A stretch of DNA of 62,616 nt, counting the filler, from Dugesia japonica (Eukaryota): assembly GCA_001938525.1 (NCBI GenBank). It is 5 parts of 5 records of this genome, joined end to end, with 100 filler letters (N's around TTAATTAATTAA, not from the genome) between each part and the next. Parts side by side here need not be neighbours in the genome. Positions count along the whole stretch, not along the records: positions 1 to 16,772 come from MQRL01575081.1; 4 more parts are not named here. One strand, 5' to 3'. This document shows, in pieces, positions 631-11,202 of the stretch. The notes below the pieces were generated by a model. That model worked only from the letters and a program-made list of their open reading frames with translations, was not told where the DNA came from and ran no database searches. How positions within the stretch are numbered: the stretch's first letter is position 1; each line of letters opens with the position of its first letter. Both the position numbers and the translations under genes were made by a program.

Positions 631-675
631 TTATGTGCAGAGATTGAACCCCACTATTCCTTTACTAATAATAAT

Positions 676-734
<59 letters not shown>

Positions 735-3700
735 NNNNNNNNNNNNNNNNNNNNNNNNNNNNNNNNNNNNNNNNNNNNNNNNNNNNNNNNNNNNNNNNNN
801 NNNNNNNNNNNNNNNNNNNNNNNNNNNNNNNNNNNNNNNNNNNNNNNNNNNNNNNNNNNNNNNNNNNNNNNNNNNNNNNNNNNNNNNNNNNNNNNNNNNN
901 NNNNNNNNNNNNNNNNNNNNNNNNNNNNNNNNNNNNNNNNNNNNNNNNNNNNNNNNNNAATAATAAGAATAATGATTATTAACCGGATTTTATTAACAAT
1001 ATTGATCTCAGATTTATCAGATATTTTGCATTCTTCTAATGTTCTGTCATTGTTTAACAATTCATCTTGATAGGTTAATTTTATTTCATCTGAATTCAAT
1101 CCTATTTTATCTTGAATTTTATATTTTAAATCAATGATTTTCATGGTGTTCTGTATTTGAAAGGAAATTGTTTTCCCATCTATCGTTTTAACAAGAATTT
1201 GTATTTCAGTTCTAGAATCAATACTAAATTAAAAAAATTAATAATTNNNNNNNNNNNNNNNNNNNNNNNNNNNNNNNNNNNNNNNNNNNNNNNNNNNNNN
1301 NNNNNNNNNNNNNNNNNNNNNNNNNCTCATCATCCAATACATTAGATTGATAAACCAATTTCTGATCATCAGGATGCAATTTTAGTTGCTTTTGTATTTC
1401 CTTTTTTAAATCTTTTATTTTGCTATGTTTTTTTAGTTTTATTAAAAGTGTTCTCTTCTGCTTTGTTTTCACAAAGATTTTTATTCTAAATTTATTAATC
1501 AACTCAATGAAATTAATTATTTTGAAACCTTGATTTAGCTACAATAAATATCACGGATTCGTCCTTAATCTCATATTTCATCAAATCTTTGTTATTCTCA
1601 TTCAATATTATATCCTTATATTGTAAATCATATTTATGAAGATTCTTTCCTATTTTCTTTTCAGTTTCCCTTTTTATTTCAATAATATTCTTTGATTTTT
1701 CAACCTGAAATACTATCGTTAATCCTTCGATTATTAAGGCAATTATTTCCATTTCTTGTCTAAAATAATATAATAAATAATAATAAAACAGATAGATACT
1801 AGCGCACTGAATACCGCCCGCCAACGAAAAGATCTAGTAATTTTGGTGATCTAAGAAATTTACATTTTGATTGGTCGATAATTTGAAGATAATGTTTTTT
1901 NNNNNNNNNNNNNNNNNNNNNNNNNNNNNNNNNNNNNNNNTCGAATTTTCTATTTTTCCTTTTCTATTGTGTTCAAGTACTCTTGTATTATACTTATTTT
2001 TTTAGCATTTTCATGTGACATTGTTCACATACATAACATCTTGGTCTAGGTAACATAACCATGTTGAATTCCTTTTCTTTATTCTAATACCATGTCTAGA
2101 ATACTCAAATAATTAATATATGCCTGGAATTGTGACGTAATAGATTTCTTCATCGTAATCCTGGACGTTAGAATATCAGCCAAGTAATTTAAACAAAAAA
2201 TTAAATATCTTCGTGACACTAGTTATAATGACAAGTGTTATGACCCTTAAATTGGAGGAAGCAATTGTTTATCTTGATGATATACTGATATTTTCTAAAA
2301 CTGAGAAAGAGCATACAAAAAGATTGGAAAAAGTTTTTAATCAAATTAGAAATTCAGGTTTGAAATTAGGTTCTGATAAATGTATATATATGAAAAGTGA
2401 GATTCAGTTTCTGGACCATAACATTTTAAAAAAGGGTTTAAAAACTGATCCAGAAAAGATAAAACCAATTAAAGAATTTGAACAACCTAAGTGTTTAAAA
2501 AAACTTTGTGGATTTTTAGGGCTTACAAATTTTTACAAAAAATTTATTAATGACTATCCAAAACACTCGAGGATATTAGAAAGTTTGTGGAAACATTAAA
2601 AATAAATTAATTCGGTCAGATCAATGTAAACAAAGTTCTGAAGCTTTACAATGAGAATTAATGAAGGTTCCTATACTTATTTATCCTTATTTATATTTAT
2701 TTATATTTATTTAGATTTGTTCAAAAAATTCATACTAGATACAGATGCTAGCTTTGACACAAGTGGTGGAGTATTATCAAATTTAGAAGAACAAGGCAGT
2801 GAACGGGTTATAGCTTATGGATCAAAAGCTATGAGTAAGCATGATTTAGGTTATTGTATAACCAGAAAGAGCTTCTAGTAATATATTATTTTACGTAAGA
2901 TTATAAAGACTATTTATACAAAAAAAGATTTAAACTTCAAACTGATCACAAAACCATAACTTTAATGATTAATACAAAAAACCGATTACTCTACAATTCC
3001 AGACATGGATCAATTATTTAAGTAGTTTGGATATGATTATGGAATATAGAAAATGAAAATGTCATTTAAATGCTGACGCAATGTCGAGGAATAACTGCGA
3101 AACATGTATTCATTGTAAAATGAATCATGAAAATGCAAAAAAAGAGAAAATGAAAACTAAAGTCTTAGCAATTGAGCTTAAAACAAATGGTAATAAATGG
3201 CAAGAAAACTCTGAAGAAANNNNNNNNNNNNNNNNNNNNNNNNNNNNNNNNNNNNNNGAATTCAAAATTTAAGTTTTCAAATGATATCATAATGACAAAT
3301 AATAATAAAATTTGGATTCCTTTAGAATGCTGAAAAGTATTTGTAAGAAGTGAACACGAATCGCTATGTCATATAAGATCTCGAAAAATTGCAGCTCATA
3401 TAACAGAAAATTATGATTTGGAAGGCCAAGAAGAAATAGTAAAAGTAGTTACACAAAGTTGTAAAAATTGTAGATTAAGAAAAACACAAAAAACTAAAAC
3501 AAAATAAAAAATTATTAGTATTCCAGTTGATGACATCTTTGAAATCATTCATATTGATTTTTGTGGTCCTTTTAAGAAAACATTATATGGAAAACAATAA
3601 ATTTTAGCTATAATTGATAAATTCAGTAGATTTATATCTCTCAATGCAGTTGCACATCAAGATGAAAAAACCACTGAAAAATTTTCAAAAATAATTGGAT

Positions 3701-4399
3701 TTTGAAATATGGTGCACTGAGAATAATACAAAAAGATCGTGGAAAATCATTTGAAGCAAATCTATTCCAACAATTAGCTAAGGAATTTAATTGTGAAATC
3801 CAATAATCAAGTTCATATCATCATAGTAGTACTGGAATAAGTGAAAGACAATTTCGAACTATAAGAGATACAATTCATATTAGTTTACAGGATAAGAAAA
3901 TGCAGGACTGGGCAGAAATTTTACCAGAAATAGAATTTATGATGAACACCACAATTCAGAGAACGACAATATTTGGTTAGAAATAGACAAGGCCAGATGA
4001 TTGACAGGTCAGTTCACACCTCATAATATAAACAACAATAGGTGAGAAATTTCACGACTTAACTAAACTGCGATTTTTCACACCTTTGGCTTAAACTTTC
4101 ACACTCTAACTTTAAAAATNNNNNNNNNNNNNNNNNNNNNNNNNNNNNNNNNNNNNNNNNNNNNNNNNNNNNNNNNNNNNNNNNNNNNNNNNNNNNNNNN
4201 NNNNNNNNNNNNNNNNNNNNNNNNNNNNNNNNNNNNNNNNNNNNNNNNNNNNNNNNNNNNNNNNNNNNNNNNNNNNNNNNNNNNNNNNNNNNNNNNNNNN
4301 NNNNNNNNNNNNNNNNNNNNNNNNNNNNNNNNNNNNNNNNNNNNNNNNNNNNNNNNNNNNNNNNNNNNNNNNNNNNNNNNNNNNNNNNNNNNNNNNNNN

Positions 4400-4446
<47 letters not shown>

Positions 4447-5965
4447 CATTATTATTATTACTATTTTACTAATTAAAATAAAAATTTAATAAATAAAAGT
4501 CAAGTGATAGGAAAAATTTATTACAATCATAATCCAAAAAATACATTTCATTGTTTAATAGGCTTCATACTTCTTTAACAATCATATCACAGCAATGGAA
4601 TTAGTTGACATTGAAAAAAAACAACAATTATCATTTATTTTAAAATTTAACTTAATTATTAATTATATAATAACCATAAGCCATACTGTCATTTTTATTC
4701 TTCCAGAATCGCTTATCGTCCGTGCATGATAACGCGCTTTTCTGAGTTTCTACCGTATAAATCTGATGATTTATTGACCCGAAGGTGCTTTGATTTACTC
4801 TCTTTACTTCTGCTCCAATATATACGTCCAGATAGTTATCATGACGAATATCAATTTGTTTCAAACCGATTCCTTTAGCCTTCATTGTTGTACTGCCATC
4901 TTCCTTCTTCATGCTATGGCATTTGAGTCTTAAAAATACTCATTCAAGAAAATTTTCTTCCTAACACTCATCTGTAAATAGCCCAATCTTGTTGGCCACT
5001 TCACTCGAGTACAGAGGATGATCCATGGGATAATTACTTGTATCCAGCAGACCGTCAGATTTCACTTCTCTTAAGAGCATATCTTTGTTCACTCCGGTAC
5101 ATGTCAAGTAAAACCTATCTGTGTCACCTACAATAATATCAATTTTACAGCAATATTGATTTGGATATTTTTCCAACTCTTCATACTGTAACTTGTACAT
5201 GCGTAACTTGCTAAGATCGATCACCATCTGTCCAATGTAACTTGGCATATTTAGCTTTTTTGGCTTACAGCTTTTAATTCCTCTGCTATATCCATAGTCT
5301 TTTTGAATGTCGCTTTGCTCGTATATGTAACAAATTTCTTTTCATTATTGAAGAGTCGAAGATTCATGCGCTTCTTTAAATTTTCAACCGTCTTACCGTA
5401 CAAAGCATTATTCAGATGTAGCTCTTCTCGCGTTTATGTAATTCGCAAAAATTTCCGTCTGTTTAAATTTAATTATCCTATGTACTGCCGTAACATGAGC
5501 ACTTAGTTTAATATCTAACTCTAAAAATCGCCACTAGATAACATATTAGCTTTTCGGCTCATGTGTTAGCAGTAACGTTTTCACCTTTCATTCTGGCGGG
5601 TATTTATGCTCTGGCGTTAAAGGTAATTTATCAAACCAATCATGATGTTCGATATGTATATCCAGATCAACTTCCAACAAGTATCCAATTTCATTGTCAC
5701 ATCTTGATAATAATAACGTCTGATATTCTTCTTCCAACTGATATTCCGCTATAAACTCAAAGTCTATATGGTAAAGGCTGTGTTAAGATCTAACCATATA
5801 GATTATTTATATCGATATATAGCAGTGAGGTATTCTCATCTGTCAAAACGTAATGTGTATTTACAAATGTCATGCCACCTCTAATTCCTGATTCAAATAA
5901 CCTATGCATTTCCGGATCCTGTAGTAATTTTAATAGCCTATCCATTGTTTTGTTTATAATTTCAC

Positions 5966-6030
<65 letters not shown>

Positions 6031-9000
6031 NNNNNNNNNNNNNNNNNNNNNNNNNNNNNNNNNNNNNNNNNNNNNNNNNNATAATAATAATAATAATAAT
6101 AATTTCATATGGTTAATAAATAATATTTAAGGCTCATCATATTTTCATTGAAAAATTTTTAAGTTAGAGTGTGAAAGTTTAAGCCAAAGGTGTGAAAAAT
6201 CGCAGTTTAGATAAGTCGTGAAATTTCACACCTATTGTTGTTTATATTATGAGGTGTGAACTGACCTGTCAATAATTTTGTCGTGTCCCTGCCTAACAAC
6301 CTACTAGCGACGAATTTTTCTCCAGCTGAAAAAAAGTTACTCAAAAAATGAATTGATTGGAATGATAAAAAAAATTTAAATGAAAGAAATCTAAAGCGTA
6401 AAAGAATAATAAACAATTTAAATAACTATGAAAATTCCAAAAATTTCGAAAAGAATAATACAAATAGAAAATTTAATATTGGTGACGAAGTTTTAATTAA
6501 AAGAGAAAGTCCACATAAAAATGAAAACCGATATGAAAGACAAATAATAATCATAGAGAAAATATATGATAGGAATTTTAAATTAGAACGTACTAATGGT
6601 AAAAAAAATAATGAGAAATATAGATTGGCTAAAATACTTTAAAAACGGGGAATGTGCGATATGACTAATAATATAATATTTCACATTGACCTTTATATAA
6701 GTAAATCGACATATGTATGTTATAATAGGTGAATGCATGATTGAATGTTTGAATGTGTGTATGATTTTAGGGGTTAGGCATCATGCTTAACTGATTCCTC
6801 AAAAGCTATATATATATTTGTTACAATGCCATTTTGCGTTTAGAATATATATTTTATGCTTAATTCGTTTTCCAAGTCTAAAAATATATACAATACATAG
6901 TTAGAGATATGGGATATCTGAACAAGAATTCGAATTGTAGAATAGCACAAAACCAAATATCTATTCTTTACATTTGTACTTAATTGCGTCATCGGCCGAA
7001 CTTTATCTAATTAGTTGGTGAGAGCGTTGAGCCAGTGCTACCCAAATACTTATTCATTCAAAATTAACTTATTCACCTGTATTCGATAGCCCAAATTATT
7101 GATTTATTTGATATTCCATATTCATCGAATGTTTTTTCGTTCTCCAATATTTTATCTTCATAAATTANTATTTGCTTATCAACATTTATTCCTTTTTCAT
7201 ATTGAATTGCCTTTCGAAAATCTCCAATTTTTTGTGTTTTTAGAACAATAAGTTGAACAACACTTCCATCAATTATTTTCACGAATAATTCTATTCCTTC
7301 ATTTCTAATTATATTTAATTAATTTCTAATTATATTTAATAAATTAAAACAAACATTAAAACATCAATTGTTGAATATTCTCTAATCAATTCGTATTGAC
7401 NNNNNNNNNNNNNNNNNNNNNNNNNNNNNNNNNNNNNNNNNNNNNNNNNNNNNNNNNNNNNNNNNNNNNNNNNNNNNNNNNNNNNNNNNNNNNNNNNNNN
7501 NNNNNNNNNNNNNNNNNNNNNNNNNNNNNNNNNNNNNNNNNNNNNNNNNNNNNNNNNNNNNNNNNNNNNNNNNNNNNNNNNNNNNNNNNNNNNNNNNNAA
7601 ATTATTGATTAATTACAAATATGTGAAAAATATTGATCACAGATCCATTACATATTTGATAATCAGATAAATGTTTGTCATCATCCAATATTTTATATTG
7701 TTCATCATAAAAATGTGATTGTGATGAATATTTCTGCGTTGATTTCTCATCGATTATTTTTTTCCTAGAATAATGAAATAATCGAAATACAGATCGATAC
7801 AATCTAAATTCTGATTACTCAGTTAATTCTTCAGTTTTCATTGGATCAGTTGATTGGTTCATTATTTCATTTTTATAAACTAATTCGTATTCATTTTCGT
7901 TCAGTTTTGTTTTTTTATTTATTTCAGATTTGATATGTTTTATCGGAAATAATTTATTAATACATAAACTAAATAATTCTTTTTCTGATTTTCTGACGAA
8001 TATTTGTATTACATCACCATAATATCTGAAATAATAATTAAAAATAGCATTTTATTAATAAATTAATGATTGCTTCGATTTATCATCAACATTGATAATA
8101 GATTGATCAGATATTTGATATTGATCAATTGATTTGTCATTATTATCCAATATTTCACCTTTATAAATCAATATNNNNNNNNNNNNNNNNNNNNNNNNNN
8201 NNNNNNNNNNNNNNNNNNNNNNNNAAATCAATCTCTGATTGATCAGATATTTGATATTGATCAATTGATTTGTCATTATTATCCAATATTTCACCTTTAT
8301 AAATTAATATTAATTTATTAAGCTTTAACTGTTTCTTTCGTCCAATTTTCTTTTTTATATCTCTGATTTTATCAGATTTATCAGGATAAATTGGAAATAT
8401 TGATTCATCTGATGATGATTTAATAAATATTTCTATTACATCAGGATGTCTACATTAATAATTAATAATTAAATTTAATTGATAATCACAAACAAATCAA
8501 TATTGATCACAGAGTGATTACATAGTTTATAATAAGATAAATATTTGTCATTATCATCCAATATTTCATATTGTTCATCATCAAAATGTGATTGTAATGA
8601 ATATTTCTGTATTGATTTCTCATCGATTAATGTTTCCCTGCAATAATAAAATAATCGAAATACAGATCGATACAATCTGAATTATGATTACTCAGTTAAT
8701 TCTTCACTTGTAAATGTTTTCATTGGATCATTTGATTTGCTTATTTTTTCATTTTTATAAACTAATTTGTACTCATTTTCGTTCAGTTTTGTTTTTTCAT
8801 TTATTTTAGTTTTTATTTGTTTGATTAGAGATGATTTATTAAAACATAAACTAAATAGTTCTTTATCTGACTTTCTAACAAATAATTTTTTTACATAACT
8901 TCTACAATAATAAATTAAAAATCACATTTAATTAATAATATAATGATTGCCTCGTATCATAATCATAAATAATTACAGATTGATCAGTTATTTGATATTT

Positions 9001-11202
9001 ATCAAATGATTTGTCACCATCCAATATTTCACCTCCATAAATCAATATTAATTTATTAAAATTTTTTCGTTTTTTTTGTTTAATTTTGACTTTTATATCT
9101 CTGATTCTATCTGATTTATTAACATAAATTTGAAATATTGTTTCATCTGATGATGATTTAATAAATAATTCTATTACATCAGGATGTCTACATTAATAAT
9201 TAATAATTAAATTTAATTAATAATCACAAACAAATCAATATTGATCACAGATTGATCACATATTTGGTAATCAGATAAATATTTGTCATCATCCAATTTT
9301 TCATATTGTTCATCATAAAAATGTGATTGTGATGAACATTTCTGTATTGATTTTTCATCGATTAATGTTTGCCTGCAATAATAAAATAATCGAAATATAG
9401 ATCGATACAATCTAAATTCTGATTACTCAGTTAATTCTTCAGTTTTCATTGGATCATTTGATTGGTTCATTATTTCATTTTTATAAACTAATTCGTATTT
9501 ATTTTCGTTCAGTTTTGTTTTTTTATTTATTTCAGATTTGATATTTTTGATTGCAAATGATTTATTAATATGTAAGCTAAATAATTCTTTATTTGGCTTT
9601 CGAAAAAAAATTACTATTAAATCATCATCATATCGTCTACAATAATAATATTTAAAAATNACATTTAATTAATAATTTAATGATTGCCTCCAATTATCAT
9701 AATAGAAATCAATCTCTGATTGATCAGATATTTGATATTGATCAATTGATTTGTCATTTTTATCCAATATTTCACCTTTATAAATCAATATTAATTTTTT
9801 ACGCTTTAACTGTCTCTTCCCTCCAATTTTCTCTTTTATATCACTGATTTTATCAGATTTATCAGGATAAATTGGAAATATTGTTTCATCCGATAATGAT
9901 TTAATAAATATTTCTATTACATCACCAGAATGTCTATAATAAAAAATNNNNNNNNNNNNNNNNNNNNNNNNNNNNNNNNNNNNNNNNNNNNNNNNNNNAA
10001 TATTGATCTCAGATCCATCACGTATTTCGTATTCATCAATTGTTTTATTATCGATCATTTCTCTGCTTTGATAACTCAATTTTTGTAAATATTTCTTCAT
10101 TTGTGTTTCCGTTTCAATTTTAATTTTCATATCTCGAACTNNNNNNNNNNNNNNNNNNNNNNNNNNNNNNNNNNNNNNNNNNNNNNNNNNTCTCTACTTT
10201 TCTAATAAACATCGAAAAGTTTTTTCTATCTTTCATAACAAAAAATATTTTAATACTAAAAATAAAATTAATAATATTAAAATTCAATTAATAATTAATT
10301 AATTACGTTAATTTATCAACTGCATTGATGACAGATTTGTCACATATTTCATAATCCATCAATCTTTTCTCATCATTCAATTGTAAATCTTGATAAATCA
10401 ATTCTTGGTCTTTAGGAGCAATTTTTATTTGTTTTGCAATTTTGTTTTTCACATCAATAATTTTATCACAATTTTTTACATTAATTGAAAATTTTTTATT
10501 GGCAGTTTCAATAAACAATTCCATTTTATATCTGTTATTATTAATCAAATATAATCAATAATTAATTAATTATTACCTATTTATTAGTTTTTTAACATTA
10601 ATTATAGCCAAACTAATTATTCCGTAATCTTTTAATGTTTTATCATCATCCAATTCTTTATCATTATAAAATAATTGTTGCAAATCATAATCGATATCAA
10701 CCACTTTTGATATTTGAGATTTCAATTTGGAAACTTTATCAAACTCTTCAACTAGAAATGCAAAAATCTTCTCATTGACAGTTTCAACAAATATTCTCAT
10801 TCCTCCTCTAATATAAATAGAATCAATCAATAATAAATTATTCATTAGAAAATCAACCTCAGTCTAGTGACAACATTGATCATTGAAATATTATTTATTT
10901 GATAATCATTCAATCTCTTGTTATCTTCCAAAATTATTCCATCAAATAGTAAAATTTGTTCATTCACAGACAATCCTGTTTTCATTTCAATAGATTTTTT
11001 CACATCCATAATTATCATTTCATCATTTTCTAACAAAATAGCTACCAAATCATTATTGAAATTAACAATTAATTGAAATTTGTTTCTAAATTTAATTAAT
11101 TAATTCAATTCTTTCAGTAAAATAACCTCACTTTTTAAGCAAACTTTCTTCAATTTTTTCCTTCAAAATTTCTTCAAAAGAATTATCGAACATATTCGGC
11201 AT
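631..11202 (-). CDS. Spliced poly-ubiquitin-like protein gene, about 15 tandem divergent UBL domains
   Basis: Manual splicing of the minus strand gives one frame across every resolvable junction. Exons: 11202-11132 (MPNMFDNSF...), 11085-10858, 10807-10577, 10531-10307, 10255-~10000 (gap), 9933-9688, 9636-9427, 9372-9232, 9187-8951, 8901-8692, 8637-8494, 8449-8074 (gap), 8025-7819, 7764-~7618, an exon ending ~7355 (mostly in gap), 7304-7077, 1759-1529, 1485-~1326 (gap), 1223-984, terminal 664-631. Fully resolved internal exons are multiples of 3. Domains show ubiquitin-fold motifs (QILVKTIDGKTI, QQLFYNDKELDDDKTLKDYGI). Confidence 0.85.
666..735 (+). repeat. (TAA)n microsatellite in last intron, running into a gap
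   Basis: Direct observation. Confidence 0.95.
1950..2160 (-). pseudogene. Short inverted Gypsy RNase H C-terminal fragment
   Basis: Minus strand reads KSITSQFQAYINYLSILDMVLE*RKG, matching the ITSQFQTWINYLSS motif of other Gypsy copies in the window. Confidence 0.7.
3968..6305. mobile_element. Non-autonomous mini-Polinton/Maverick with TIRs and 6-bp TSD
   Basis: Near-identical inverted repeats ~4000-4119 and ~6155-6273, degenerate out to 3968/6305. Right end is CTACT (AGTAG). TSD AACGAC (3962-3967) / AGCGAC (6306-6311). Removing it restores integrase NTTIQRTTNFSPAE. Confidence 0.85.
4652..5940 (-). pseudogene. Protein-primed family B DNA polymerase, C-terminal half (Polinton type)
   Basis: Motifs GIRGGMTF, YIDINNLYG, NNALYGKTVEN, YIGQMVIDLSK, GDTD, KIGLFTDE, KAKGI, DDKRF; frameshifts and stops. 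Confidence 0.9.
7600..9933 (-). repeat. Three tandem copies of a ~740-bp, three-exon, two-UBL module within the poly-UBL gene
   Basis: Units start at 9933, 9187 and 8449 (spacing 746 and 738 bp). Exons and introns are similar between copies (e.g. repeated gtaatc...ttgtatcgatct intron). Confidence 0.9.
10858..11085 (-). CDS. UBL domain 1 exon; ends VTRLR, completed to RLRGG by the next exon
   Basis: CTG AG|gttgat...tattag|A GGA GGA ATG across the 50-nt intron 10857-10808. Confidence 0.85.

What the first reader, a model, noticed from the sequence alone, without database searches (positions are those of the whole stretch)
10795..10875. The only RLRGG motif is assembled across an intron
Seen: domain 1 ends ...VTRLR and the next exon begins GGMRIF, giving RLRGG-M only after splicing. 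No other readable junction has GG. Known: LRGG is the DUB cleavage and E1 activation signature. Inference: processing would release an N-terminally extended, conjugatable UBL plus a non-cleavable ~14-domain chain. Skipping exon 3 would remove the GG and could act as a splice switch.
Basis: partly seen in the sequence, partly recalled or inferred. Interest (0 to 1): 0.7.

Follow-up and report, generated by a model that had tools for sequence, protein, structure and literature searches.

The report
Lone ubiquitin-tail junction in multi-UBL gene
A minus-strand gene of a very AT-rich eukaryote encodes about a dozen diverged ubiquitin-like domains, roughly one per exon. Only the first domain keeps ubiquitin's RLRGG tail, split by an ordinary 50-base intron, which suggests but does not prove that it is cut off the way ubiquitin is cut from its precursor.

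Summary
Exon 2 (11085-10858, minus strand) ends ..V-T-R-L plus AG. A 50-nt GT-AG intron follows (10857-10808). Exon 3 starts A|GGA GGA ATG, so the spliced product reads VTRLRGG-MRIFVET. Of nine readable domain junctions this is the only one with Gly-Gly.

The split is not special. All 13 modelled introns (44-54 nt) are in the same phase. The junction introns of domains 1, 2, A1 and A2 split an Arg codon that lines up with the ubiquitin Arg74 codon split here. Each exon is therefore one repeat unit shifted by about two codons.

Domain 1 is a confident ubiquitin fold (pLDDT 94.7, TM 0.91-0.92 to ubiquitin) but its core is only 31% identical to ubiquitin. Among 298 comparably diverged domains in other multi-UBL proteins, none keeps L[RK]GG. 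The tail therefore looks selected, which favours cleavage after Gly-Gly.

No RNA read spans this intron, although four paralogous intron types of the gene are spliced in one RNA data set. Cleavage, conjugation and a splice switch remain untested. Similar unnamed multi-UBL proteins are common in eukaryotes, and two have the same layout. I rate this a variant of a known kind, of moderate interest.

The parts
11132..11202 (-). Exon 1: start codon at 11202-11200, encoding a 24-residue acidic leader (MPNMFDNSFEEILKEKIEESLLKK). The exon ends after two bases of a codon.
   Evidence: First ATG of the open frame. The junction reads ..SLLKK|NKFQLIV. One low-depth X8 contig runs unspliced through 11067-11281.
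11086..11131 (-). Intron 1, 46 nt, GTGAGG..TTTAG.
   Evidence: Only in-frame GT-AG join of the leader to domain 1.
10858..11085 (-). Exon 2 (228 nt): ubiquitin-like domain 1 (D1), ending ..MINVVTRL plus AG of the Arg74-equivalent codon.
   Evidence: Pfam PF00240 E 4e-12. phmmer aligns it to ubiquitin 22-73. AlphaFold pLDDT 94.7 with a full beta-grasp. Foldseek best matches are ubiquitin, TM 0.91-0.92. Core identity to ubiquitin is 22/70.
10808..10857 (-). Intron 2, 50 nt, GTTGAT..ATTAG. This is the intron that splits the RLR|GG junction.
   Evidence: Not seen spliced or unspliced in RNA. An in-frame alternative acceptor 12 nt downstream (AG at 10797-10796) would delete GGMR.
10798..10868 (-). 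Codons for T-R-L-R / G-G-M: ACT AGA CTG AG (10868-10858) and A GGA GGA ATG (10807-10798).
   Evidence: Direct reading. Collinear with the polyubiquitin junction.
10577..10807 (-). Exon 3 (231 nt): Gly-Gly plus domain 2 (MRIFVET..KKLIN plus AG of an Arg codon).
   Evidence: Pfam PF00240 E 1.3e-14. phmmer aligns GGM-RIFVET to GGM-QIFVKT.
10307..10531 (-). Exon 4 (225 nt): YK plus domain 3 (MELFIET..VDKL). The preceding intron is 10576-10532 (45 nt).
   Evidence: Pfam PF00240 E 2.4e-13. Junction LINR|YKM.
9999..10255 (-). Domain 4 (IKIFFVM..SEINI), interrupted by the N run 10141-10190. Its 3' junction is hidden in the N run 9948-9998. The preceding intron is 10306-10256 (51 nt).
7620..9936 (-). 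Three copies of a higher-order repeat of about 735-880 nt. Each copy has an A-type UBL exon (9936-9688, 9187-8951, 8449-8225, plus a partial 8174-8074). Each also has a B-type composite UBL in two exons (9636-9427 + 9372-9232; 8901-8692 + 8637-8494; 8025-7819 + 7764-about 7620).
   Evidence: Repeat families. Exons are 82-94% and introns 83-98% identical between units. dN/dS is 0.62-0.92. The first B exon aligns to ubiquitin residues about 1-50 and the second to 48-69. Pfam hits.
9637..9687 (-). GC-AG intron after the first A-type domain. Its paralogues are 8950-8902 and 8073-8026.
   Evidence: X8 contigs join 9636/9688 and 8025/8074 with CT..GC ends on the + strand. Sequences.
7073..7400 (-). 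End of a masked UBL (..YELIREYSTIDVL, 7400-7355), intron 7354-7305 (50 nt), then the last exon 7304-7073 with the last UBL ending ..AIEYR and the stop codon TGA at 7075-7073. There is no Gly-Gly at the C-terminus.
   Evidence: Pfam PF00240 E 5.9e-12. The spliced joint 7304/7355 is seen in an X8 contig at depth 110.8 and in one X23 read. Sequence.

Best explanation
Shown:
- This is a polyubiquitin-derived gene (11202-7073, minus strand, at least 15 exons, about 1,100 codons).
- It encodes a 24-residue leader followed by about 13 head-to-tail, strongly diverged ubiquitin-like domains.
- The gene is built from repeat-unit exons bounded by 44-54-nt introns that all sit after the second base of a codon. 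At the D1, D2, A1 and A2 junctions that codon is an Arg lining up with ubiquitin Arg74.
- Each such exon therefore starts with the two residues that correspond to Gly75-Gly76 of the previous domain. This is why the RLRGG motif is 'assembled' by splicing.
- Only exon 3 still carries GGA GGA. Other exons carry other residues there (YK, or none), so the remaining junctions cannot be cut by ubiquitin-type proteases.

Inferred:
- Domain 1 has a fully ubiquitin-like fold but only 31% core identity, yet keeps R72-L73-R74-G75-G76 followed by Met. The tail is therefore probably under selection.
- The primary product is most likely cut after Gly-Gly by a ubiquitin-precursor-type protease (UCH or USP class).
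- That cut would release leader-D1 with a free Gly-Gly end, plus a protease-resistant chain of about 12 UBLs that starts at Met and ends ..IEYR.

Whether released D1 is then conjugated is open (about 20-25%). The 0.5 below applies to the whole statement. I hold the structural part at about 0.85 and cleavage at about 0.45-0.5.
For: - Gene model: open frames, GT/GC-AG introns of one phase, and exon lengths that are multiples of three.
- Four paralogous intron types of this gene, or of near-identical copies, are spliced in RNA contigs of run X8. These are 7304/7355, 8025/8074, 9636/9688, and the B-type internal donor 8691 joined to acceptor 7764.
- Ubiquitin family matches for D1, D2, D3, A1 and the last domain, E 4e-12 to 1e-14.
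- D1 and D2 align collinearly with the polyubiquitin junction.
- The D1 model has pLDDT 94.7 and its best fold matches are ubiquitin, TM 0.91-0.92, rmsd 1.1-1.4 A.
- One Gly-Gly junction out of nine readable.
- Base rate: in 157 multi-UBL proteins from the 1.84-billion-protein library, domains with under 40% core identity to ubiquitin keep L[RK]GG in 0 of 298 cases and any GG in 2 of 298. At 40-50% identity the figure is 2 of 303. D1 is at 31%.
- Two unrelated multi-UBL proteins (P0020, P0050) have the same layout: the first UBL ends L[RK]GG-M at residue 84-88 and many UBLs without GG follow.
Against: - No RNA read or contig spans 10858/10807. Three raw RNA runs have about zero depth over exons 1-3, and the X8 contigs there are short, 3-4% different from the window, and may come from paralogues.
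- D1 has changed several residues that ubiquitin-specific proteases and E1 contact (L8N, R42I, I44L, H68N, L71T), so the housekeeping enzymes may not accept it.
- The repeated part evolves almost neutrally (dN/dS 0.62-0.92), so the gene as a whole is weakly constrained.
- No orthologue or close paralogue could be fetched, so conservation of the GG codons could not be checked.
- The base-rate comparison uses proteins of other taxa.
Confidence: 0.5

Rival explanations
1. Relic without processing. The RLRGG-M junction is a leftover of the polyubiquitin ancestor that happens to survive at one junction. The protein is never cut and acts, if at all, as one long multi-UBL scaffold.
For: - 103 of 157 related multi-UBL proteins have no L[RK]GG at all. 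In the 17 with exactly one, it sits at varied positions, including first, middle and last, as expected for patchy decay.
- The D1 recognition surface has diverged.
- dN/dS is near 1 in the repeats.
Against: A complete five-residue tail on a 31%-identical core is not seen in 298 comparably diverged domains. Neutral retention of five residues at about 31% identity would be roughly 0.3%.
Confidence: 0.33
2. Decaying or non-functional tandem array. The locus is a young, unstable, TE-flanked repeat that is transcribed only incidentally, and the motif has no consequence.
For: - Transposon remnants lie between the two UBL genes.
- The locus has many assembly gaps.
- Only 0.31-0.76 of the sampled words are held by the DNA runs X1-X7 of the same species label.
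- Expression is near zero in three RNA runs.
- dN/dS is 0.62-0.92.
Against: No in-frame stop or frameshift occurs in any readable exon over about 3.3 kb of coding sequence. All splice sites are intact. Spliced contigs exist in X8.
Confidence: 0.1
3. Wrong gene model at this junction. Exon 2 and exon 3 are not joined as predicted. Domain 1 would belong to a short product ending ..RLRLIF (intron retained), and the Met of MRIFVET would start a separate protein.
For: No read crosses the junction. Summed X8 depth is 5.8 and 16 over the two bins covering exon 2 (10744-11031), against 81-98 over 10312-10743. One X8 contig runs unspliced through intron 1.
Against: - Three things coincide: a GT directly after the split Arg codon, an AG 50 nt later in the same phase as every other intron, and GGA GGA ATG right after it. 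This is not expected if the GG codons were untranslated leader.
- The high-depth X8 pieces are short (87-157 nt) and carry 3-4 differences each, so they may come from paralogues and the depth is not a transcript boundary.
Confidence: 0.07

Closest known systems
Polyubiquitin precursors (yeast UBI4, human UBB/UBC type)
   Same: Head-to-tail ubiquitin-fold repeats. The D1/D2 junction RLRGG-M(R/Q)IFV(E/K)T is collinear with the polyubiquitin junction that precursor-processing DUBs cut (the role of the junction is established knowledge).
   Different: - The repeats are only 27-37% identical to ubiquitin and differ from each other.
- Only 1 of 9 readable junctions has Gly-Gly.
- The last repeat ends IEYR, not GG plus a cap residue.
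- An intron lies at every repeat border.
- A 24-residue leader precedes D1.
Ubiquitin or UBL fused to a cargo and cut off: Ub-eL40, Ub-eS31, FUBI-eS30, plant Ub-RUB1/NEDD8 (from general knowledge)
   Same: An N-terminal ubiquitin-fold domain ending in Gly-Gly is directly fused to a downstream protein and would be released by one cut.
   Different: The cargo here is a chain of about 12 further UBLs rather than a ribosomal protein or a second modifier. The N-terminal domain is a diverged UBL with a leader. Cleavage has not been shown.
Unnamed eukaryotic multi-UBL proteins found, e.g. Cylindrotheca closterium CAJ1957214.1 (1420 aa, 'Ubiquitin-like domain-containing protein'), Pecoramyces ruminatium EP00833_P001383 (892 aa), P0020 and P0050
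   Same: 5-26 diverged UBL domains in a row, mostly without Gly-Gly between them. P0020 and P0050 have L[RK]GG-M only after the first UBL.
   Different: No window domain is more than about 47% identical to any of them over a partial domain. Their gene structures and functions are unknown. Three literature searches found no description of this class.
ISG15 and FAT10 (tandem-UBL modifiers)
   Same: UBL domains joined without a cleavable Gly-Gly between them.
   Different: They have two domains and carry the conjugatable LRGG/GG at the C-terminal end. Here the only such tail is on the first domain and the C-terminus has none.
Bacterial polyUbl proteins of E1/E2/JAB operons (Iyer, Burroughs and Aravind 2006, PMC1779556)
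   Same: Genetically encoded tandem Ub-like domains.
   Different: They have two or three domains, are prokaryotic and sit in operons. There are no introns and no relation to the ubiquitin-type tail seen here.

Membership tests
Ubiquitin family (Pfam PF00240, beta-grasp fold) | Match to the family profile above its curated cut-off (25.4 bits) | tested here: met
   D1 46.1, D2 54.1, D3 50.1, A1 45.1 and last domain 45.6 bits. The first exon of the B type scores only 19.8 bits.
Ubiquitin family (Pfam PF00240, beta-grasp fold) | Complete beta-beta-alpha-beta-beta-(short helix)-beta fold | tested here: met
   The D1 model has pLDDT 94.7, with strands 3-9, 12-18, 43-47 and 67-73 and helices 25-36 and 58-61. 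Best PDB matches are ubiquitin at TM 0.91-0.92. Other domains were not folded.
Polyubiquitin precursor | Repeats identical or nearly identical to ubiquitin | tested here: not met
   Core identity to a ubiquitin unit taken from P0011 is 27-37% for seven window domains.
Polyubiquitin precursor | Every repeat ends RLRGG and is followed directly by Met1 of the next | tested here: not met
   Only D1/D2, which is 1 of 9 readable junctions.
Polyubiquitin precursor | Last repeat ends in Gly-Gly plus one or a few cap residues | tested here: not met
   The protein ends ..IIWAIEYR followed by TGA at 7075-7073.
Conjugatable (type I) ubiquitin-like modifier | C-terminal Gly-Gly that is free or can be exposed by one cut | tested here: met
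   D1 ends RLRGG followed by Met in the spliced product. This is met at sequence level only and depends on the predicted splice.
Conjugatable (type I) ubiquitin-like modifier | Processing by a specific protease and activation by an E1 | not testable with these tools
   Needs biochemistry. Arg72 is kept, but L8, R42, I44, H68 and L71 are changed.
UBL-cargo fusion precursor (Ub-eL40, FUBI-eS30 type) | N-terminal UBL ending Gly-Gly fused in frame to a downstream protein | tested here: met
   Leader-D1-RLRGG is followed in frame by D2 through the last domain. Unlike known members, a 24-residue leader precedes the UBL.
UBL-cargo fusion precursor (Ub-eL40, FUBI-eS30 type) | Demonstrated cleavage between UBL and cargo | not testable with these tools
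   No protein data.

The most novel reading that the evidence does not exclude
D1 is a lineage-specific, truly conjugatable ubiquitin-like modifier made from a precursor whose other half is a genetically encoded, protease-resistant linear chain of about 12 UBLs. That chain would be a built-in mimic of Met1-linked ubiquitin chains. The gene family grows by exon duplication and diversifies quickly, for example in conflict with parasites or mobile elements.
Probability: 0.1. Interest if true: 0.75.

Novelty: new variant of a known kind. Interest (0 to 1): 0.35.

Why it matters
If the single Gly-Gly junction is cut, this gene makes two products from one message. One is a new ubiquitin-like protein with a free Gly-Gly end. 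The other is an uncuttable chain of ubiquitin folds that resembles a linear ubiquitin chain.

That would give a simple test system for two questions: how far a ubiquitin fold can drift while its tail is still recognised, and what the widespread but undescribed multi-UBL proteins of eukaryotes do.

If it is not cut, the locus is just one more fast-evolving polyubiquitin derivative. The split of the motif by an intron has no meaning of its own either way.

Tried and rejected
- **RNA proof of the splice.** My one read-laying run, on 7000-11300 with one RNA contig set and three raw RNA runs, gave no read across 10858/10807. Depth over exons 1-3 was almost zero. Most raw reads matched only short stretches and ran on into unlike sequence, so they come from paralogues.
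- **Close relatives.** The search for homologous proteins with domain 2 found nothing. The exhaustive profile search found many multi-UBL proteins, but none closer than about 47% over part of a domain. The gene's own product is not in the library, so I could not check conservation of the GG codons.
- **Organism.** I could not identify it. Run names are coded, and Rfam and tRNA scans were empty. Atlas look-ups of the PolB and RT remnants gave only 'Eukaryota' with mixed phyla.
- **Literature.** Three searches for diverged or uncleavable poly-UBL proteins found only ISG15/OASL/USP7-type tandem UBLs and bacterial polyUbl.
- **Splice-switch idea.** Exon 3 can be skipped in frame, and an in-frame acceptor 12 nt downstream would remove GGMR, but no read supports either. 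The 927-nt skip seen in X8 (7763/8691) has only a 22-nt anchor in near-identical repeats. It may be a strain with one unit fewer or a mapping ambiguity.
- **Diversifying selection on exons.** Introns are better conserved than exons between units 1 and 2 (about 95% against 85%), but not between the other pairs. The sample is too small to claim anything.
- **B-type composite domain.** I did not fold it, because its two exons cannot be given as one reference.
Full report
**What is there**

The piece is about 20% G+C. On its minus strand it carries a gene that runs from an ATG at 11202 to a TGA at 7075-7073. Three-frame translation shows a row of open segments that each look like ubiquitin. These segments can be joined by short introns, all lying after the second base of a codon:
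- 10 are GT-AG and 3 are GC-AG.
- They are 44-54 nt long and 6-26% G+C.
- Exon lengths are multiples of three (228, 231, 225, 210, 141, 237, 210, 144, 207).

The product has a 24-residue acidic leader followed by these domains:
- domains D1-D4;
- three copies of a 735-880-nt higher-order unit, each made of an A-type domain and a two-exon B-type composite domain;
- a domain mostly hidden in the N run 7401-7598;
- a last domain ending IEYR.

Pfam PF00240 matches D1, D2, D3, A1 and the last domain at E 4e-12 to 1e-14.

**The finding itself**

Exon 2 ends ..GTT GTC ACT AGA CTG AG at 10858. The intron 10857-10808 is GTTGAT..ATTAG (50 nt). Exon 3 begins A GGA GGA ATG AGA ATA TTT at 10807. The spliced product reads VTRLRGG-MRIFVET.

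Of nine readable domain junctions, only this one has Gly-Gly. At least three more junctions lie in N runs.

phmmer against solved structures aligns D1 residues 24-75 with ubiquitin 22-73 and aligns GGMRIFVET with the GGMQIFVKT junction of polyubiquitin. The motif therefore sits exactly where ubiquitin's tail sits. Chance is not an explanation.

**Why the motif is split by an intron**

Every modelled intron has the same phase. At the D1, D2, A1 and A2 junctions, and in the second gene at 1824-665, the split codon is an Arg in the tail: RLR|GGM, LINR|YKM, DNWR|RY, YDTR|SY, and AKSR|IKIF in the second gene. These line up with ubiquitin Arg74, the codon split at D1/D2.

The exon is thus the repeat unit shifted by about two codons. 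Each such exon opens with the residues that correspond to Gly75-Gly76 of the previous domain. Exon 3 still has them, exon 4 has YK, and others have nothing comparable.

The split is a by-product of how an ancestral polyubiquitin-like array was cut into exons and then grew by exon duplication. It says nothing particular about regulation.

**RNA evidence**

My single reads call covered 7000-11300.
- The contig set X8, labelled RNA by guess, contains spliced joints. These are 7304/7355 (GT-AG, depth 110.8), 8025/8074 and 9636/9688 (both GC-AG), and the B-type internal donor 8691 joined to acceptor 7764.
- The exon-per-domain model, including the unusual GC donors, is therefore backed by RNA of this gene or a near-identical copy.
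- Read direction in the stranded runs fits a minus-strand RNA.
- No read or contig crosses 10858/10807. Three raw RNA runs have about zero depth over exons 1-3. One low-depth X8 contig runs unspliced through intron 1.
- X8 contigs differ from the window by 3-4%, so other strains or paralogues are involved.

The junction of interest therefore rests on sequence logic alone. Three things coincide: a GT directly after the split Arg codon, an AG 50 nt later in the gene's common phase, and GGA GGA ATG immediately after it.

**Is the tail a relic or is it kept?**

I folded D1 with a 28-row alignment. The model has pLDDT 94.7 and a complete beta-grasp. Its best structural matches are ubiquitin itself (TM 0.91-0.92, rmsd 1.1-1.4 A). 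Yet the D1 core is only 22/70 identical to ubiquitin, without gaps.

For a base rate I ran a profile of the window's 13 domains against 1.84 billion representative proteins:
- It found 27,551 matches. The top 150 are proteins with 5-26 UBL stretches.
- Most are unnamed eukaryotic predictions. Named examples come from a diatom (Cylindrotheca closterium) and an anaerobic fungus (Pecoramyces).
- In these proteins I cut out 1,349 ubiquitin-like domains that align to nearly full-length ubiquitin.
- Below 40% core identity, 0 of 298 keep L[RK]GG and 2 of 298 keep any Gly-Gly.
- At 40-50% identity, 2 of 303 keep L[RK]GG.
- Above 80% identity, 177 of 216 do.

A full RLRGG on a 31% core is therefore exceptional. 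This argues that the tail is held by selection independently of the rest of the domain.

Points against:
- D1 has changed several surface residues that ubiquitin-specific enzymes use (L8N, R42I, I44L, H68N, L71T), and most chain-forming lysines.
- The repeated part of the gene evolves nearly neutrally (dN/dS 0.62-0.92).
- I could not fetch any orthologue to test conservation.

**Most likely mechanism**

Shown: the gene architecture, the ubiquitin fold of D1, and a single ubiquitin-type junction.

Inferred:
- The primary product is cut after Gly76-equivalent by a ubiquitin-precursor-type protease.
- This gives leader-D1 with a free Gly-Gly end and a chain of about 12 UBLs that no such protease can take apart.
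- I put cleavage at roughly 45-50% and later conjugation of D1 at 20-25%.

The main rival is an uncut relic (about one third). Minor rivals are a decaying array and a wrong gene model at this junction.

**Comparison with what is known**

The locus works like a ubiquitin or UBL-cargo fusion (Ub-eL40, FUBI-eS30, plant Ub-RUB1) whose cargo is a tandem-UBL chain. It is not a polyubiquitin gene, because three of that family's defining features were tested and not met: near-identical repeats, Gly-Gly at every junction, and a capped Gly-Gly at the end.

It belongs to a large, apparently undescribed set of eukaryotic multi-UBL proteins:
- 103 of the 157 retrieved have no L[RK]GG.
- 17 have exactly one.
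- Two of those 17 (P0020, P0050) have it after the first domain followed by Met, the same layout as here.

Three literature searches found no account of this class.

**Verdict**

The tail is real, unique in the gene and probably selected. The intron split is incidental, and cleavage, conjugation and a splice switch are untested.
- This is a new variant of a known kind. Interest is moderate (0.35).
- The organism could not be identified, and I did not fill or look up any N run.

Noticed in passing
window 665-1824 (minus strand): A second multi-UBL gene with at least three UBL domains (MEIIALII.., IKIFVKT.., IQILVKT..). Its introns are short and in the same phase (e.g. AKSR|IKIF, about 47 nt). 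No Gly-Gly occurs at its readable junctions, and both ends run into N runs.
   Followed up: partly
window 9687-9637, 8950-8902, 8073-8026 (minus strand): Three paralogous introns use a GC donor (AG|GCAATC..). Two of them are seen spliced in RNA contigs of run X8.
   Followed up: yes
window 9636-9232, 8901-8494, 8025-about 7620 (minus strand): The B-type units are composite UBLs. The first exon matches ubiquitin residues about 1-50 and the second matches 48-69. About 35 extra residues and an internal 54-nt intron lie between them, which looks like a partial internal duplication.
   Followed up: partly
window 7620-9936: Between repeat units 1 and 2 the introns are better conserved (140/147) than the exons (482/569) and than synonymous sites (pS 0.17). 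The other unit pairs do not show this. The cause could be gene-conversion patches, constraint on tiny introns or fast exon change.
   Followed up: partly
window 7763/8691: An X8 RNA contig joins the donor at 8691 to the acceptor at 7764, skipping 927 nt (one repeat unit) in frame. The anchor is only 22 nt in near-identical repeats. It may be a strain with one unit fewer, exon skipping or a mapping ambiguity.
   Followed up: no
window 2159-3977 (plus strand): Broken LTR-retrotransposon pol gene with stops: reverse transcriptase (PF00078, E 9e-11), RNase H (PF17917, E 2e-9), and downstream open segments to 3977 that may be integrase but gave no Pfam match.
   Followed up: partly
window 4655-6104 (minus strand): Broken open frames, higher in G+C (33%), that resemble a protein-primed family-B DNA polymerase of Maverick/Polinton-type elements. 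There was no Pfam hit. Atlas neighbours are eukaryotic clusters, one of which carries PF03175.
   Followed up: partly
window 14435-14644: Near-perfect palindrome: two 102-nt arms, 91% complementary, 6 nt apart.
   Followed up: no
window 14921-15086 and 15245-15410: A 166-nt direct repeat, 100% identical, next to N runs. It may be an assembly duplication.
   Followed up: no
window 16500-16772: A stretch richer in G+C with repeated CCATGGCAACC-like motifs, running to the end of the piece. Rfam found nothing.
   Followed up: no
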